Counted from the first letter of the stretch, positions 7,005-22,700 are shown. The stretch is 64,000 nucleotides of DNA from Octopus sinensis (GCF_006345805.1 NC_043023.1:8370001-8434000); one strand, 5' to 3'. Numbers and translations are program-made. The notes: generated by a model not told the origin, from the sequence alone.

Positions 7005-7076
7005 AGATCTATCCAATAATACAATCGTGAAAATTGAAAAAGGATCGTTTGCAAATCTTCCGAGCTTAAAAATTTT
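7005..7076 (+). CDS. LRR exon 1 (72 nt, phase 2-2) of spliced LRR/LRRCT/three-finger-domain gene
   Basis: tttcag|AGATCTATCC...AAAATTTT|gtaagt; translates DLSNNTIVKIEKGSFANLPSLKI(L), a typical 24-aa LRR; GACTAAT branch-like motif about 40 nt upstream. Confidence 0.9.
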
Positions 7077-7379
7077 GTAAGTTGAACCAGTCTTGTTCAT
7101 ACTATATTCCTGAGTATATATTTCCTCAAATTTAATATCTTTCTATCTTTCTTTCTTAACCTTCTTTTGCCCTTCTCTAACTCACATTATCTCTCTCTCT
7201 ATATATATGTATGTGAGTTGAGTGTGTTTGTGTGTGACGATGTGCGTTTAAATAGGTCTTTGTGTTCTACATCACTGTTTGGTATATTGTGAAAAGTGCG
7301 TATATAGTCATACGTATATTTATGTCTGAAATGTGTGGATAAATATATAGTCCTTTAATGTGTCGTCTTGGGCAGGAGA

Positions 7380-17400: not shown

Positions 17401-19714
17401 TGCTTCAAATTGTATTTTCCACTCAGGACTACGTTGCTCAGCCTTTTTCACAGGAAATCGCTTCCTTCTCTTCAATGAGGATATTGAAATGTCATGTTCG
17501 GAGAACTGCCAAATGATCCATGGCGGATGCTCTATTTTTAACTCCAGGTCTTAAAATTACCGGGAGACATCACATGTCCACTGTAGATAGTCGCTTTCAG
17601 AATCCTTGTTGCTTTCACAATAAGATTATGTGTCACTCCGGTTAAATTTAAACACCTTCCCCAGGTTTTTCACTGTCTTCTAGATGATGGATAGTAAGTG
17701 ACCGCTACTGACTGAGGAATACCTGCTTCTGAGGCCAACTTTGTTGATTGACGAAGCTGAAACTCTTGTGACTCCCAGTCATAAACTACTCAAGTCACTT
17801 TAGGATCGTCCATGCCATTATGGCAGATGTTGTAAAGAAAGTTAGGTCAAGACTACGACTACAAGTACTCAATCTTCCTCGGTATGACTCAGCTTACAGT
17901 TGCAGTTTAGTATTCCCCCACTTTTCACTACATTTACTTGGGTGGTGTAGAGTTCTCTCTCACTCCACCCTCACCGTCATTTTAAATGGAATTTTAAGGC
18001 TTCGATGAGAGTTTGATCGTATTATCTCTCTCTCTTCAACCGTTCTGTATTCTCCACCACACTACCTCTCTGCTTATAGCCTGTTCGCCAGCTCTCCTTA
18101 GTTCCAGTTCATTTGAATGGTTCCAACAAGCAAAATTTGTTGTAGGTTACTGCGATCCAGCCTCTGGAAACACGACCGAATCCGGCTTCCTTCAGTGCAG
18201 GCGCCAACAGTTGGCATTTGATTAACACAAAATTAGGATTTCATTGGAAACGCATTTGTTACTCATTCTGTCTGTGATGTACTGTGCAAGCAGGAACCTG
18301 TTGTGCTTAGATGATTTTGATATGGAATCTTCGGCATTTAGCCTAATTACGGGTCTCAAATTATTATCAAATACATTTTGTTAAAGTTCTTTCTCAACAT
18401 TGCCGTGACCCCCACCTTTTATCAGGGCTAAGAACCATCTCGTTCTTCTTCCCTTTGTTGTAGACACCTGCCATTGCACTCACTGCTATTTATGGCAAAT
18501 ACTTTTACACTGCGTAAGGCTGATCCTCAAGCCATGGCGACATCTAATCCGGCATCTCGAATACCGCAACAATTTTCCACCATTTGTAGAACGGCGTAGT
18601 TTCATTCGAGTGTTGCCGCAAGCCGTCTACGTAGACGGTTAAGAGCTTCATAGTCAATGGACCACTAGCCTCCACAAACTGATGCACGTAGTGTTTCCTA
18701 AAGGCCGCAAATATCTGCTTAGAATCGAAGAGAACGCATCTCACCTGATTCATCAACACCAAATTATTTTCCGATGCCACGTTGCACCTACTCTTATTCA
18801 CCCATATGTCGGACATTGTCATTAAAGCATGCAAAAATGAAAACAATCCTAGTGTTTACCGTTGGAGAAGCGGACAAGAGCCAATCTCGTCGGTGGCAGC
18901 GGCACTTGCAGTGTATTGGGTAGTCCCTTTATTCCCTCTAGAGTGTGTTTCTGTGTAGAAATATATAAAATTTATATGTATATAATTCATATTTGTGTTT
19001 GTGTGTGTATCTGTGTTCCTGAGCTTAAATCTTTTTCCCTACCTCTTCATTTACTTATATATAAATTCACATATATAAAGGTGTTGATATAAATTCCAGG
19101 AAGCATGAGGGAAGGTGTTGTTTACACTGGTTCAGTTCACATCTAACTGTTGCAGATAGAAATTTAGTAGTAGTAAGGAATATAGGGAGGTAAGGCAAAG
19201 TAAAGGACATTATGGGGGAATAAGGGTGCCATAGACAAAGATTAGTTTGTTTCTGTGGTGATAGAAAATCTAGGTCCTGGAAGTTATATCAACACCTTTA
19301 TGGTTGGATTTAACTTTTCTGAGAATTTAATAATCATTTCAAGAATTTAAAAAAAAAACTGTGCATTGTTGGAAGACATATAAAGACTTCTTATTACCTT
19401 ACTTCAAAGTCATAGAACTCACTCTGAATGCTTCATAAGGATATTTACATTCTCTAGGATGGTTGGAAAACATATATGTGATTTAGCTGATGAATACTTG
19501 ACATTATATTTGCTGTAATATTTGCAGCTTTAAATAAAAGTGTTCTCAGTATGAAAACATTTGTACCGAATTACTGATCCATTTATGTTACTCTTCTCTT
19601 GGCTATATAATATATATATATATATATATATATATATATATATATATATATATATATATATATATATATATATATATATATATATATATATATATATATA
19701 TATGTATGTATATA

Positions 19715-22700
19715 TACAACTTATAAACAAGGGCAAAAGAAAGAGAATTCAATGCCAAATATGCCGAAATAGACTTAATCGTCAATAACCATATAATTTA
19801 TCACTATAAACACGCGTCTCGAAAGCAAGCTGATAGAAATTTCTAAAATATTTCGTTATTATCGGATCGATCCCCATTTCTGAGTTAATTCATTTAGAAT
19901 TTTCTCGTCATCAGCGATAAATACGATAAGAAAATAAATGAGATACTTACTTGTACCTATGGAAGAAGTAAACACTAAGTCATGAACACACTTAAGTACC
20001 CCAAATATATCCAAAATAGAAACTCCGCAGCATACCTCGAGACACGTGTGAAGGGACTGAAAATTCTCTTAGAGAATTCTCTTATCGTATTTATCGCTGA
20101 TGACGAGAAAATTCTAAATAAATTAACTCAGAATTGGGGATCGATCCGATAATAACGAAAGTTGTTTTCGAAAATTCTATCGGCTTGCTTTCGAGACGTG
20201 AGCTTATAGTGATAAATTATATGATCATTGACGATTAAGTCTATTTCGGCATATTTGGTATTGGATTATTTTTCTATTGTTCTTGTTTATAAGTTGTTTG
20301 TAAATTTAACCTTTAAAGGCACTTCTTTAACGTGCTGGCCATTGATAACATTTTTTCGAATATTTTATCCTATATTAGATGTAAATTTAATACTATTCAC
20401 TTCCGGACTCTCTCACTCTATGAGAACTTTCAGTCCGATCACACCTGTCTCGAGGTATGCTGTGGAAGTTAGTGTTTAGTCCTCCTATATATTGACTGAT
20501 TGCACTATTGTGGTCATTAAGGTTTTACTTTCATATCATACTACGGAAGACGGTAGAGATTATAATTTTTGTATGATTTAAAAGATTTCACGCTATTTAG
20601 TTACGTATTTAGGAGTTGTAATTTACTAATTGAATTTATTTATTGATACGGTTATACATAGGGTAAATGTGGTTGAAATTTGTGGTTTCTTTGATTTCTT
20701 TGTTCCTAAACAACACTTATTTTAGTGCTGTTCACACCGCCGGATTGAAGGGTAGTGACCAGGTGTCGAAACCATAATGGTAACAGTGGCGTAGGTATGT
20801 TGGATTGTTGCTATGGTTGTGGAATAGTATTATAACACAGATCCTTTTAATATATAGATGTGTGTGTGGGTGTGTGTGTGTGTGTGTTTGCGTGTTTGTG
20901 TGTCGGTAGATTAAGTTTACGGGAAAATAAAAGTAAAAAACTGGAGTTAGATTCAACGCTCGGGAAATTGAGAAATTCTTTTACTTTCGAACCTATGCTC
21001 CTCAACAGAAAGGAAAAGGAGAACATGAACAAAAAGGGATTAAAAATCTTGTCTATTTAGGGATCAAGCATGGCAACTGGTTAGGAAAAACATAGCTTGA
21101 CGGGAGAGATAGAGAGTCGGGGATATAATAAACAACTGGAGATCCCAAAACAGTGGTGTGCGTACGGATGTGTATGTAAGAATGTGTAAGTGTGTGTGTG
21201 TGTGTGTGTGGTGTGTGTGTGTGTGTGTGTGTGTGTGTGTGTGTTGATAGGGGCTAATGACTATGATGTGTGGATGTATGCGTGCGTAGCTGTGTGCGTA
21301 GGTATGTTGTGTGCAAAAGACACCGAGAGAATGAGTGCTAGTCTTTCAACAAATACATGCTGGGCTCGATTGGTTCGAATAAAGGCTCTAGCATGGCCAT
21401 TGTCAAATTACTGAAAAAAGTACATGTATAAACGTGTTACACACACACACACACACACACACACACACACACAACACACACACACACACACACACATATA
21501 TATATACACACACACACACACAAATATATACTTATACACATTGATATATGTGTGTATGTGTTTACCTATCTGTCTGGCGATTGATAGATACATTGATAAA
21601 CTGATAGACAGATAGATAGATGGATGGATAGATAGATAGATAGATAGATGGATAGATAGATAGATAGATGGATGGATAGATAGATAGATGGATGGATAGA
21701 TAGATAGATGGATGGATAGATAGATAGATAGATAGATAGATAGATAGATGGATAGATAGATAGATAGATGGATAGATAGATAGATAGATAGATAGATAGA
21801 TAGATAGATAGATAGATGGATAGATAGATGGATGCATAGATAGATAGATAGATAGATAGATAGATAGATAGATAGATAGACTGATGGATAGATAGATAGA
21901 TAGATGGATAGATAGATGGATAGATAGATAGATAGATAGATAGATAGATAGATAGATAGATAGATAGATAGATAGATAGATGGATAGATAGATAGACAGA
22001 TAGATAGATACATGTCTCCAGTTCTAGTTTAGTCTTCTTTACCCTTTTTATCTCATTTATCAATAACTGCTCTTCGTTAATTTTATTCCTATTCTCATCC
22101 TTCTCTTTTGTTATAGTTTCAACTTTGTATATCAGCGTCATTCTCCTCCTCATCATCATTCCAAATATTAAGAGCACCATCAGTAAATATTGTCATCATA
22201 ATCATCGTCTGCGTCCTCATAGTGGTCGTCACCCTCATCGTCATTATGATCATCGTCATCATCACTATCAACATCATCCTTATCAGTCATAATCTTAAAC
22301 CACACATGCAATGCCAGCAGACCGAAACAACTTCATCACTACCAAATCCGTCACCGTCAATGCCTACATCATAATAATTATCGCTTTCATCATCACTTAA
22401 CACAATGCCATACATCTTCATTATTATCTTCATAATCTTCACTTATCATTTTTACAATCGTCTTCACCAAATTGTCTCACTTCTACTTATTTTCTTTCTA
22501 TTTCAGCAGCTAATTCATTGGACATAATATTTGAAATATATGACTAATCACTTCTATATTATCTTTTGTAAATTATCTTTCAGACGTCTAGCCAATAATG
22601 CAATCGTGAAAATTGAAAATGGATCGTTTGCAAATCTTCCGAATTTAAAAATTTTGTAAGTTGAACCAGTCTTGTTCATACTATATTCCTGAGTATATAT

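What the first reader, a model, noticed from the sequence alone, without database searches (positions are those of the whole stretch)
7005..22655. A-type LRR exons differ almost only non-synonymously and diverge faster than the adjacent intron
Hand count: exon 1 vs 2 has 10 nt differences (7 amino-acid-changing codons, 1 synonymous); 1 vs 3 has 7 nt (5 codons, 0 synonymous); 2 vs 3 has 9 nt (6 codons, 1 synonymous). In contrast, the first 92 nt of downstream intron are identical in all three. The residue before the first conserved Leu is D/V/R here and R/I/N/N in later exons. Established: these xLxxN beta-strand positions form the concave ligand-binding face. Inference: diversifying selection.
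Basis: partly seen in the sequence, partly recalled or inferred. Interest (0 to 1): 0.8.

Follow-up and report, generated by a model that had tools for sequence, protein, structure and literature searches.

The report
Fast-evolving LRR exons, octopus receptor
Three duplicated 72-base exons, each coding one leucine-rich repeat of an octopus-specific adhesion-GPCR-type receptor, change their ligand-facing amino acids several times faster than the surrounding introns mutate, which is a well-known kind of positive selection seen here in a new gene and gene layout.

Summary
The first 92 intron bases after each exon are identical in all three copies.

The window is Octopus DNA. The exons are single-LRR, phase-1 cassette exons inside ~7.5-8 kb tandem intron+exon cassettes. 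They lie in the 5' ectodomain part of a gene with LRR array, LRRCT and a Cys-rich module. Its O. vulgaris counterpart runs on into GPS + 7tm_2 (adhesion GPCR).

The window's three copies alone are weak evidence. Their dN/dS is 1.0-1.8. The exon has 14 changes in 72 nt against 97 in 984 intron nt (P=0.014).

I added nine further copies from O. vulgaris and O. sinensis:
- The exon changes 2.5-2.8 times faster than 1.1 kb of flanking intron.
- Ten scaffold codons never change their amino acid.
- Replacements pile up at x2, x3 and x5 of xxLxLxx, and at x12. Omega there is about 6 against exon synonymous sites and about 12 against the intron rate.
- M2a beats M1a with P from 3e-5 to 1e-22.

Whole-exon omega is only 1.1-1.5. 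Exon synonymous sites are also above the intron rate, so some intron homogenisation cannot be excluded.

Verdict: site-specific diversifying selection is supported. It is a new member of a known kind.

The parts
7005..7076 (+). A-type LRR cassette exon 1 (72 nt, phase 1-1), DLSNNTIVKIEKGSFANLPSLKI(L)
   Evidence: Canonical ag|..|gtaagt sites and an open frame. Orthologous to O. vulgaris L001 34569-34640, with 2 nt differences.
14428..14499 (+). A-type LRR cassette exon 2, VLSNNAIEKIESGSFENLPNLKF(L)
22584..22655 (+). A-type LRR cassette exon 3, RLANNAIVKIENGSFANLPNLKI(L)
7077..7168 (+). First 92 nt of the downstream intron. It is identical in all three cassettes (also at 14500-14591 and 22656-22747).
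   Evidence: It is also the least variable stretch across the 12 copies (pi 0.032).
5773..13300 (+). Tandem cassette 1 (intron + one exon). It is 95.7% identical to cassette 2 over 5.4 kb and differs by 4.1% over 6.9 kb aligned.
13292..21214 (+). Tandem cassette 2
21313..23850 (+). Tandem cassette 3. It is truncated: similarity to cassettes 1 and 2 ends about 1.2 kb after the exon.
25727..25765 (+). 3' half of an LRR exon (GSFENVPRLRVL + gtaagc). It is a dead remnant of the 29051-type exon, lying next to reverse-transcriptase-like ORFs.
   Evidence: 25726-26179 matches 29087-29548 at 93%
29051..29122 (+). LRR exon of another type, RLYGNKISKIERGSFENLPRIWT(L). No counterpart was found in the O. 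vulgaris locus.
45271..45342 (+). B-type LRR exon, ILANNEIAIIEHGSFEGLINLKK(L)
47200..47271 (+). B-type LRR exon, NLANNKIAIIEHGSFDGLTNVEK(L)
49721..49789 (+). Last LRR exon, 69 nt, NLSYNRLQKFDGAFSYLSSIYE(I). It is open in all three species.
55854..56020 (+). LRRCT-like cap exon (DLRNNTDMMCGCQLPAM...YSQCKG). Boundaries are approximate.
   Evidence: It matches O. sinensis P0005 at 86%; sequence. In O. vulgaris the 899-aa GPS/7tm_2 gene model starts at an internal Met of this exon.
59251..59343 (+). Cys-rich module, first exon (approximate, from tblastn)
63803..63994 (+). Cys-rich module, second exon, with the ...CVACCRDNLCNKNDF motif (approximate; the window ends at 64000)

Best explanation
What the exons are. 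The three exons are paralogous cassette exons. Each encodes exactly one 24-residue leucine-rich repeat, and the exon boundary falls between L4 and x5 of LxxLxLxxN. They lie in the ectodomain-coding 5' part of an octopus-restricted receptor gene with this layout: LRRNT (upstream of the window), an LRR array, LRRCT, and a Cys-rich module. By inference from the O. vulgaris locus and from paralogues, the gene continues into GAIN/GPS and a class-B 7TM domain, that is, an adhesion GPCR.

How they arose. The exons were made by tandem duplication of a ~7.5-8 kb block of intron plus exon. This birth-and-death process is still running. Copy number and exon content differ between three Octopus genomes that are only about 3-4% diverged.

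What selection does. In every copy the scaffold residues (L, N, I, K, E, P) are held by purifying selection. The solvent-exposed residues of the beta-strand face (x2, x3, x5, and less so x7 and x8), plus x12 and x24, are replaced several times faster than neutral DNA changes. This is positive, diversifying selection that retunes the concave binding surface repeat by repeat.

Shown here: the anatomy, the rates, the site pattern and the strand position. Inferred: the link to the 7TM half, that the exons are all spliced in, and that the selective agent is a ligand.
For: Source and copies. The best protein hits are from O. vulgaris and O. sinensis. Window 23-11226 matches O. vulgaris L001 27577-38794 at 96.4%. 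Twelve A-type exons share the same splice flanks.

Exon versus intron.
- Nucleotide diversity (pi) is 0.162 in the exon against about 0.03-0.11 in the flanks.
- Fitch changes per site are 0.86-0.97 against 0.35. The tree-free minimum is 0.64 against 0.26.
- In all 66 pairs the exon is at least as diverged as the intron (ratio 1.07-5.9). The youngest pair shows 9/72 against 2.1% (P=7e-5).
- No intron window reaches the exon count, at 3, 6 or 72 nt.

Site pattern.
- In the parsimony count, 39-42 of the 62-70 changes fall in 5 codons, and 10 codons keep their amino acid (P(0)=3e-4).
- The a-priori concave set has omega 2.7-3.6. The rest of the exon has 0.6-0.8.
- In the site models, omega2 is 6.2-12.5 on 13-25% of codons. 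2dlnL is 101, 26.8 and 20.8.
- The two orthologous pairs pooled give 9/144 against 61/2284 (P=0.02). Their replacements all lie in codons 4, 8, 22 and 23.
- The AF2 model has pLDDT 88, with strands at codons 23-24-1. Its best fold matches are NGL, LINGO, VLR and Slit.

Gene identity.
- The O. vulgaris GPS+7tm_2 gene model starts inside the LRRCT exon.
- Of 31 relatives of the LRRCT + Cys-rich module, eight long ones were looked up for source and name. Seven are named Octopus proteins; the eighth carries no name or species.
- Of ten relatives scanned against Pfam, seven also carry GPS and/or 7tm_2 (P0059, P0066, P0068, P0069, P0071, P0073, P0074), most together with LRRs. The other three are LRR-only, one with a weak HRM hit.
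- NCBI names for the relatives looked up include ADGRG6-, GPR126- and ADGRA3-like.
- Ritschard et al. 2019 (PMC6408891) describe an octopus-specific adhesion-GPCR expansion with LRRs and one Death domain. They found branch-level positive selection but no selected sites.
Against: - Whole-exon omega is only 1.05-1.55 and is not significantly above 1.
- Exon synonymous changes (11.5-13 on 15.7 sites) exceed the intron expectation of 5.5 (P=0.004-0.011). The fitted rate ratio rho is 2.2-2.8. So the intron is not a perfect neutral yardstick, or the exons are partly older than their introns.
- The site models are my own implementation. They were run on 24 codons and 12 sequences with fixed topologies.
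- Codon 8 toggles between V and E about 7 times. That could be micro-conversion between copies rather than repeated selection.
- The clearest orthologous pair, W7005 and L001_34569, shows no acceleration (2/72 against 2.3%).
- B-type exons show the same direction, but not significantly.
- No transcript data were available. The 7TM half lies outside the window.
Confidence: 0.7

Rival explanations
1. Intron homogenisation with conversion-resistant exons. Gene conversion or unequal crossing-over keeps the cassettes' introns alike within a species. Converted exons are removed by selection. The exons therefore preserve older differences, silent as well as replacement, rather than evolving faster.
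For: - Exon synonymous changes run at about twice the intron rate, and rho is 2.2-2.8.
- In the intron tree, neighbouring cassettes cluster by species: W_14428 with W_22584, and L001_43745 with L001_50090.
- The trio has a 96-nt invariant run starting 4 nt before the donor site.
Against: - The exon and intron trees are broadly congruent.
- Within-species sister cassettes also share derived exon motifs (KIL/KFL in the window; NRWFANLP..YI in O. vulgaris). Their exons are therefore recent duplicates too.
- Conversion tracts would have to skip a 72-nt island on both sides in many independent pairs.
- Replacements at codons 8, 22 and 23 exceed even the raised synonymous rate (rho free: P=1.5e-6).
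- This rival still requires selection for exon diversity.
Confidence: 0.15
2. Relaxed constraint. The duplicated exons are redundant and drift neutrally (dN/dS about 1). The intron next to them is conserved for splicing.
For: Whole-exon dN/dS is about 1. The first ~100 intron nt are slightly less variable than the rest (0.18 against 0.27 minimum changes per site).
Against: - Neutral drift cannot exceed the neutral rate. The exon runs 2.5-2.8 times above 1.1 kb of intron and 3.4 times above the whole-cassette divergence.
- Ten codons never change their amino acid, although 8 replacements are expected there (P=3e-4).
- Splice sites and the reading frame are intact in all 12 copies.
Confidence: 0.07
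3. Selection for dissimilarity as such. Neighbouring repeats are pushed apart to avoid misfolding between identical repeats, or to suppress unequal recombination. No ligand is involved.
For: The youngest duplicates diverge most, relative to their introns (L001_43745 vs 50090, ratio 5.9).
Against: - Changes are confined to surface positions of the concave face. They are mostly replacements, not silent changes, whereas suppressing recombination would act on any base.
- Paralogous genes keep runs of near-identical LRRs, for example P0062.
- The orthologous pair L001_87270 and L002_5362 also diverged at the same codons between species.
Confidence: 0.05
4. Artefact. Assembly errors in a tandem repeat, or dead pseudo-exons, create the pattern.
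For: Tandem 7.5-kb repeats are hard to assemble. One truncated exon remnant exists at 25727.
Against: - The same pattern appears in three independent assemblies.
- The orthologous cassette is collinear over 11 kb at 96.4%.
- The frames are open and the scaffold residues are conserved. Annotated O. vulgaris and O. sinensis proteins use these exons.
Confidence: 0.03

Closest known systems
Octopus-specific adhesion GPCR expansion ('group 3' of Ritschard et al. 2019, PMC6408891); NCBI names for relatives include ADGRG6/GPR126-like and ADGRA3-like
   Same: The family is restricted to Octopus. The N-terminus carries LRRs, followed downstream by GPS + 7tm_2. One relative has a Death domain, as that paper reports. 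The paper found positive selection on branches.
   Different: That work treated whole genes and found no selected sites. Here the signal is located to specific positions of intragenic, tandemly duplicated single-LRR exons. I did not verify by phylogeny that this gene belongs to their group 3.
Plant LRR resistance genes and receptor-like proteins (Cf-4/Cf-9, Xa21, NLRs): hypervariable solvent-exposed xxLxLxx residues (from my own knowledge of Parniske 1997 and Michelmore & Meyers 1998)
   Same: The scaffold is conserved, omega exceeds 1 at the x positions of the beta-strand, LRR copy number varies within genes, and the family evolves by birth and death.
   Different: This is an animal receptor of the adhesion-GPCR type. 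There is one repeat per exon, with multi-kb introns that are duplicated along with it. The ligand and biological role are unknown.
Lamprey and hagfish variable lymphocyte receptors
   Same: Both use 24-residue LRR modules with variability on the concave face, capped by LRRNT and LRRCT. VLR structures are among the best fold matches.
   Different: VLRs are assembled somatically from cassettes that lack splice sites. Here the modules are ordinary in-frame exons with invariant ag/gtaagt sites, arranged in germline order.
LGR and glycoprotein-hormone receptors (LGR4-6, FSHR, TSHR)
   Same: Both have one LRR per ~72-nt phase-1 exon in front of a 7TM domain (gene structure from my own knowledge). 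LGR4 and LGR5 ectodomains are among the fold matches.
   Different: Their 7TM domain is rhodopsin-class, whereas the orthologue here has 7tm_2. Their LRRs are old and conserved, not recently duplicated or fast-evolving.
Accelerated exons with conserved introns in venom genes (snake PLA2, conotoxins; from my own knowledge)
   Same: Coding exons diverge faster than the adjacent introns among recent duplicates.
   Different: Those are secreted toxins duplicated as whole genes. Here the duplicated units are exons within a single receptor gene.
Alternatively spliced LRR or Ig exon arrays (crab 'VLR2' with ten splice isoforms, PMC10045472; Dscam1)
   Same: In a paralogous O. sinensis gene, annotated isoforms differ by whole 24-residue LRR units, and one isoform pair has a different unit at the same position. 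The O. vulgaris model of this gene skips three A exons.
   Different: There is no transcript evidence for this gene here. No docking/selector complementarity was found.

Membership tests
Extracellular 'typical' 24-residue LRR domain | LxxLxLxxNxL core repeated every 24 residues; match to the Pfam LRR models | tested here: met
   All exons carry the L..L.L..N.I..I....F..L motif. O. vulgaris and O. sinensis proteins built from these exons hit LRR_8 at E=9e-39 and 4e-21.
Extracellular 'typical' 24-residue LRR domain | Curved solenoid with one short beta-strand per repeat on the concave side | tested here: met
   The AF2 model of P0001 has pLDDT 87.9, with strands every 24 residues at codons 23-24-1. 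Foldseek E values are 1e-9 to 1e-7 against NGL, LINGO-1, VLR and Slit2.
Extracellular 'typical' 24-residue LRR domain | Cysteine-rich LRRNT and LRRCT caps | tested here: inconclusive
   The Pfam LRRNT hit on P0001 is below the cut-off (20.7 bits against 25.8). The cap exon at 55854-56020 has the CGC...C...C pattern in the right place but gives no Pfam LRRCT hit.
Adhesion GPCR (class B2) | GAIN/GPS autoproteolysis motif followed by a 7tm_2 domain in the same protein | not testable with these tools
   The window ends at 64000, inside the Cys-rich module, so that part of the gene is not in the window.
Adhesion GPCR (class B2) | Orthologue or paralogues join this N-terminal module to GPS + 7tm_2 | tested here: met
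   The O. vulgaris gene model with GPS + 7tm_2 (899 aa) starts at an internal Met of the orthologous LRRCT exon. Of ten relatives scanned, seven carry GPS and/or 7tm_2: P0068, P0071, P0073 and P0074 have both, P0059 has 7tm_2 only, and P0066 and P0069 have GPS only. All but P0069 also have LRR hits.
Sites under positive (diversifying) selection, codon-model criterion | A site class with omega above 1 fits significantly better than a nearly neutral model | tested here: met
   M2a vs M1a gives 2dlnL=26.8 (P=1.5e-6) on the intron tree with a free synonymous rate, 20.8 (P=3e-5) on the exon ML tree, and 101 with the intron clock. Posterior probability reaches at least 0.99 for codons 22 and 23, at least 0.92 for codon 8 and 0.21-1.00 for codon 1. 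This is my own implementation, with no recombination screen.
Sites under positive (diversifying) selection, codon-model criterion | Whole-sequence dN/dS above 1 | tested here: inconclusive
   Estimates are 1.05-1.55. The binomial test gives P=0.22-0.51.
Sites under positive (diversifying) selection, codon-model criterion | Replacement rate above an independent neutral yardstick (the introns) | tested here: met
   M0 omega is 3.47 with the intron clock. Replacements at the concave positions number 27-31.5 against 4.2 expected (P below 1e-13).
VLR-type somatic LRR assembly | An incomplete germline gene flanked by LRR cassettes that lack splice sites | tested here: not met
   All 12 A-type exons share invariant acceptor (attatctttcag) and donor (gtaagttgaa) sites; in one O. 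vulgaris copy a 1-nt gap follows the gtaagttgaa. They lie in order and in frame within one transcription unit.
Dscam-type mutually exclusive exon cluster | Docking and selector RNA complementarity between a unique site and each variable exon's flank | tested here: not met
   A reverse-strand search with the -150..+170 flank of exon 1 found only microsatellite matches.
LGR-type LRR-GPCR | Rhodopsin-class (7tm_1) transmembrane domain behind the LRR exons | tested here: not met
   The orthologue and paralogues carry 7tm_2 and GPS.

The most novel reading that the evidence does not exclude
The LRR cassette exons may be used combinatorially. Because every exon is 72 nt and phase 1-1, any subset can be spliced in frame. 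One gene could then yield many ectodomains whose concave faces differ at positively selected positions. That would be a germline-encoded diversity system with Dscam-like logic on an LRR/adhesion-GPCR scaffold, in an animal known for expanded recognition-molecule families.

The hints are as follows. NCBI isoforms X3-X9 of a paralogous O. sinensis gene differ by whole 24-residue LRR units, and one pair has alternative units at the same position. The O. vulgaris model of this gene skips three of its eight A exons. The splice flanks are invariant in all 12 copies.
Probability: 0.25. Interest if true: 0.8.

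Novelty: new member of a known kind. Interest (0 to 1): 0.55.

Why it matters
Octopus genomes are known for lineage-specific expansions of cell-surface recognition genes (protocadherins and GPCRs). Which residues are being selected has not been pinned down; the published analysis of this GPCR expansion found no selected sites.

Here the signal is localised to named positions of the LRR concave face. The unit of innovation is a duplicated exon-plus-intron cassette that turns over between sibling species.

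This gives a concrete, testable handle on ligand recognition by an orphan octopus receptor family. One can swap or mutate x2, x3 and x5, compare species, and sequence full-length cDNAs.

It also warns annotators of two things. First, the O. vulgaris annotation appears to split one gene in two, with the downstream GPCR model starting inside the LRRCT exon. Second, whole-gene dN/dS misses this kind of selection.

Tried and rejected
I used the O. vulgaris protein P0001 instead.

2. Fetching the genomic loci of the closest paralogues, P0062 and P0055, to test whether the pattern is general failed. Neither is on record.

3. B-type exons (45271, 47200 and four from other loci) have exon/intron ratios of 0.74-1.83. 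None is significant.

4. A search for Dscam-like docking/selector complementarity found only microsatellite hits.

5. The fold of the Cys-rich module could not be established. Pfam finds nothing. The AF2 model is unusable (pLDDT 35). A PDB profile search gives only a non-significant hit to the activin receptor type-1 ectodomain, through the CCxxxxCN motif (E=0.47).

6. A CpG explanation for the exon excess does not fit. By my reading of the alignment, only about 3-4 of the ~62 changes are CpG transitions.

7. The ratio of transitions to transversions at biallelic columns does not differ significantly between exon and intron. The fitted kappa is nevertheless lower in the exon (1.3-1.6 against 2.85).

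8. The second protein search did not return the 899-aa O. vulgaris GPCR model. The link to the 7TM half therefore rests on coordinates and on paralogue architecture.

9. Four literature searches found no description of these exon cassettes.

Full report
**What is at the coordinates.** The window is AT-rich, repeat-rich eukaryotic DNA. Positions ~5.8-23.9 kb hold three tandem copies of a ~7.5-8 kb unit. Two copies are full length and the third is truncated after ~2.5 kb. Each copy contains one 72-nt open segment, at 7005-7076, 14428-14499 and 22584-22655. Each is bounded by attatctttcag| and |gtaagttgaa. Read in phase 1, each encodes one 24-residue leucine-rich repeat. The exon starts at x5 of LxxLxLxxN and ends at L4 of the next repeat. 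Further LRR exons of other types follow at 29051, 45271, 47200 and 49721 (the last is 69 nt). After them come a cysteine cap exon (~55854-56020) and two exons of a Cys-rich module (59251-59343 and 63803-63994).

**Check of the observation.**
- The pairwise differences are 10, 7 and 9 nt, in 7+1, 5+0 and 6+1 replacement and silent codons.
- Exactly 92 identical intron columns follow the donor site in all three copies.
- The residues at the first exon codon are D/V/R, and R/I/N/N in the later exons.

Within the window the excess is modest but real.
- The three copies show 14 changes in 72 exon columns against 97 in 984 intron columns (P=0.014). Only 0.5% of intron windows do as well.
- The pairwise P values are 0.045, 0.24 and 0.01.
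- Over the whole alignable cassette, copies 1 and 2 differ by 4.1% against 13.9% in the exon. Only 3.3% of 72-nt windows are as diverged, and most of those lie in microsatellites.

The 'almost only non-synonymous' argument is not evidence. About 78% of the sites are non-synonymous, and Nei-Gojobori dN/dS for the three pairs is 1.11, 1.82 and 0.99.

**Source and gene.**
- The spliced LRR protein finds O. vulgaris and O. sinensis proteins first.
- Their loci were fetched. Window 23-11226 is collinear with O. vulgaris L001 27577-38794 at 96.4%. The window therefore comes from an Octopus species about 3-4% diverged from both.
- The O. sinensis model P0005 joins LRR exons to the cap and the Cys-rich module.
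- In O. vulgaris the next called gene (899 aa, Pfam GPS + 7tm_2) begins at an internal Met inside the orthologous cap exon. The annotation has most likely split one gene in two.
- An exhaustive HMMER search with the cap + Cys-rich module found 31 relatives. Eight long ones were looked up for source: seven are named Octopus proteins and one carries no name or species.
- Of ten relatives scanned against Pfam, seven carry GPS and/or 7tm_2, most together with LRRs, and one has a Death domain. The other three are LRR-only. NCBI names for the relatives looked up include ADGRG6-, GPR126- and ADGRA3-like.
- This matches the octopus-specific adhesion-GPCR expansion of Ritschard et al. 2019 (PMC6408891). 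They reported LRRs, one Death domain and branch-level positive selection, but no selected sites.

**Enlarged sampling.** The same splice flanks identify eight A-type exons in O. vulgaris and one in O. sinensis. I aligned all 12 with 450 nt upstream and 1000 nt downstream.
- Nucleotide diversity (pi) is 0.162 in the exon and mostly 0.03-0.08 in the flanks.
- Fitch changes per site are 0.86-0.97 in the exon against 0.35-0.37 in the intron. The tree-free minimum is 0.64 against 0.26.
- In all 66 pairs the exon is at least as diverged as the intron. The youngest pair, L001_43745 and 50090, has 9/72 against 2.1% (P=7e-5).
- No intron window of 3, 6 or 72 nt reaches the exon's maximum: 13 against 6, 23 against 8, and 70 against 39.

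**Where the changes are.**
- On parsimony, codons 1, 8, 20, 22 and 23 take 39-42 of the 62-70 changes.
- Ten codons (L2, N5, I7, K9, I10, E11, N17, L18, P19, L21) never change their amino acid, although about 8 replacements would be expected at the intron rate (P=3e-4).
- In LRR register, codons 22, 23, 1, 3 and 4 are x2, x3, x5, x7 and x8 of xxLxLxx. This set is defined a priori. It has 2.25-2.62 replacements per site. That corresponds to omega 2.7-3.6 against the exon's own silent changes (P=0.0018 to 3.6e-5) and 6.5-7.5 times the intron rate. The rest of the exon has omega 0.6-0.8.
- The AlphaFold model of the O. vulgaris protein (pLDDT 87.9) places its strands at codons 23-24-1 of each repeat. 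Its best structural matches are NGL, LINGO-1, VLR and Slit.

**Codon models.** I wrote MG94xHKY site models.
- With branch lengths fixed to the intron ML tree, so that omega=1 means 'as fast as intron', M0 gives omega 3.47. M2a beats M1a by 2dlnL=101.
- With the exon synonymous rate free, 2dlnL is 26.8 (P=1.5e-6), with omega2 6.5 on 13% of codons.
- On an exon-only tree with ML branch lengths, 2dlnL is 20.8 (P=3e-5), with omega2 6.2 on 19% of codons.
- Codons 22 and 23 always have posterior about 1. Codon 8 has at least 0.92. Codon 1 ranges from 0.21 to 1.0.
- Whole-exon omega is only 1.05-1.55.

**Between species.** Two orthologous pairs could be compared.
- W7005 and L001_34569 differ at 2 of 72 exon positions.
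- L001_87270 and L002_5362 differ at 7 of 72.
- Pooled, that is 9/144 in the exon against 61/2284 in the intron (P=0.02).
- Seven of the nine differences are replacements, all in codons 4, 8, 22 and 23.

So replacement continues after speciation, not only just after duplication. The evidence is thin, and the first pair alone shows no excess.

**Turnover.** In the intron tree, neighbouring cassettes cluster by species. They also share derived exon motifs, which points to independent recent duplications in each lineage. O. vulgaris carries five further A cassettes after the shared one. At the matching stretch the window has two more A cassettes, then an exon remnant, a different exon type and ~16 kb without a long match in the O. 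vulgaris locus. Assembly error in such repeats cannot be excluded, but three assemblies agree on the pattern.

**Caveats and rivals.**
- Silent changes in the exon are about twice the intron expectation (P=0.004-0.011), and rho is 2.2-2.8. Some of these are path assignments inside multi-hit codons, and a few are CpG transitions. The excess also fits partial homogenisation of the introns, with the exon differences preserved by selection. I give that rival 0.15. It still implies selection for diversity.
- Pure relaxation is contradicted by the rate excess and by the invariant scaffold codons.
- The 92-nt identity lies in the least variable stretch of all 12 copies (pi 0.032). It probably reflects donor-proximal constraint. 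It is not what drives the result.
- Codon 8 toggles between V and E about 7 times, so micro-conversion between copies may contribute.

**Alternative use of the exons.** All these exons are 72 nt and phase 1-1, so any subset splices in frame.
- NCBI isoforms X3-X9 of a paralogous O. sinensis gene (525, 501 and 477 aa) differ by whole 24-residue units. One pair has alternative units at the same position.
- The O. vulgaris model of this gene uses five of its eight A exons.
- No RNA data were available here.
- No docking/selector complementarity was found.

Combinatorial splicing remains the most novel reading that is not excluded.

**Verdict.** The kind of phenomenon is well known: positive selection on solvent-exposed LRR residues after tandem duplication. 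What is new is the gene (an octopus-restricted LRR adhesion-GPCR-type receptor), the one-repeat-per-exon cassette layout with species-specific turnover, and the localisation of the selected sites.

Noticed in passing
window 55854-56020; L001 109392: The O. vulgaris annotation appears to split one gene in two. The 899-aa GPS/7tm_2 gene model starts at an internal Met (MSNYIK...) inside the LRRCT-like exon. The LRR array upstream is a separate 190-aa model, named 'IGF-binding complex acid labile subunit'.
   Followed up: partly
O. sinensis proteins P0062, P0085-P0089 (paralogous gene; not in the window): Annotated isoforms X3-X9 (525, 501 and 477 aa) differ by whole 24-residue LRR units. One pair carries different units at the same position. 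This suggests alternative LRR cassette exons in this family.
   Followed up: partly
window 25727-25765: Only the 3' half of an LRR exon (GSFENVPRLRVL + gtaagc) survives. The cassette around it matches 29087-29548 at 93%. Reverse-transcriptase-like ORFs lie just upstream, so it is probably an exon killed by an insertion or deletion.
   Followed up: partly
window 1061-5774 (- strand): A non-LTR retrotransposon with endonuclease and reverse-transcriptase ORFs (Pfam Exo_endo_phos, RVT_1) sits just upstream of cassette 1. Copies 91-94% identical are found near other cassettes in O. vulgaris (L001 53278-57032, 67981-72628, 83833-86680). Some cassettes were therefore probably duplicated together with it.
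   Followed up: partly
window 41617-43620 (-) and 51923-54647 (+): Two more LINE-like elements with long ORFs lie in the introns. One has RVT_1 plus Exo_endo_phos_2. The other has a 561-aa RT ORF followed by a 369-aa ORF.
   Followed up: partly
window 33283-33698 and 36153-36569: A 416-nt inverted repeat, 99.3% identical, brackets a GC-richer stretch (GC 0.448 for 34001-36000). The ORFs inside have no Pfam match. It is possibly a young transposable element with terminal inverted repeats.
   Followed up: no
window 57881-58697: A ~398-nt unit is duplicated head to tail at 99% identity.
   Followed up: no
window 6168-6515, 13669-14156, 21408-22013: An 8-nt-period microsatellite array lies a few hundred bases upstream of each A exon. 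Its length differs strongly between cassettes. It accounts for the GC-skew peaks and for the poorly alignable upstream intron.
   Followed up: no
window 50483-50551: The terminal exon of the O. vulgaris model P0001 (RMPQKLKVQIVAFIVSTAVHAFL*) is present here. Its 69 nt are identical to O. vulgaris and differ from O. sinensis by 1 nt, but the flanks are about as conserved. It might give an LRR-only isoform with a hydrophobic tail, or it might be an annotation artefact.
   Followed up: partly
window 59251-59343, 63803-63994: The Cys-rich module after the cap has about 10 invariant Cys and ends in ...CCxGNLCNKNDF. Of the eight relatives checked for source, seven are named Octopus proteins. It has no Pfam match, and the AF2 model failed (pLDDT 35). 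The only hint is a non-significant profile hit to the activin receptor type-1 ectodomain (E=0.47), which would mean a three-finger-type fold.
   Followed up: partly
A-type exons versus flanks (12-copy alignment): Silent changes in the exon run at about twice the intron rate (11.5-13 observed against 5.5 expected). The fitted transition/transversion ratio is lower in the exon (1.3-1.6) than in the intron (2.85). Neither is fully explained.
   Followed up: partly
window ~23300-40000 versus L001 38794-91000: No long match joins these stretches. O. vulgaris has five more A cassettes after the shared one. The window instead has two more A cassettes (14428, 22584), followed by an exon remnant, a different LRR exon type and transposons. 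This is large structural turnover between close species, or an assembly difference.
   Followed up: partly
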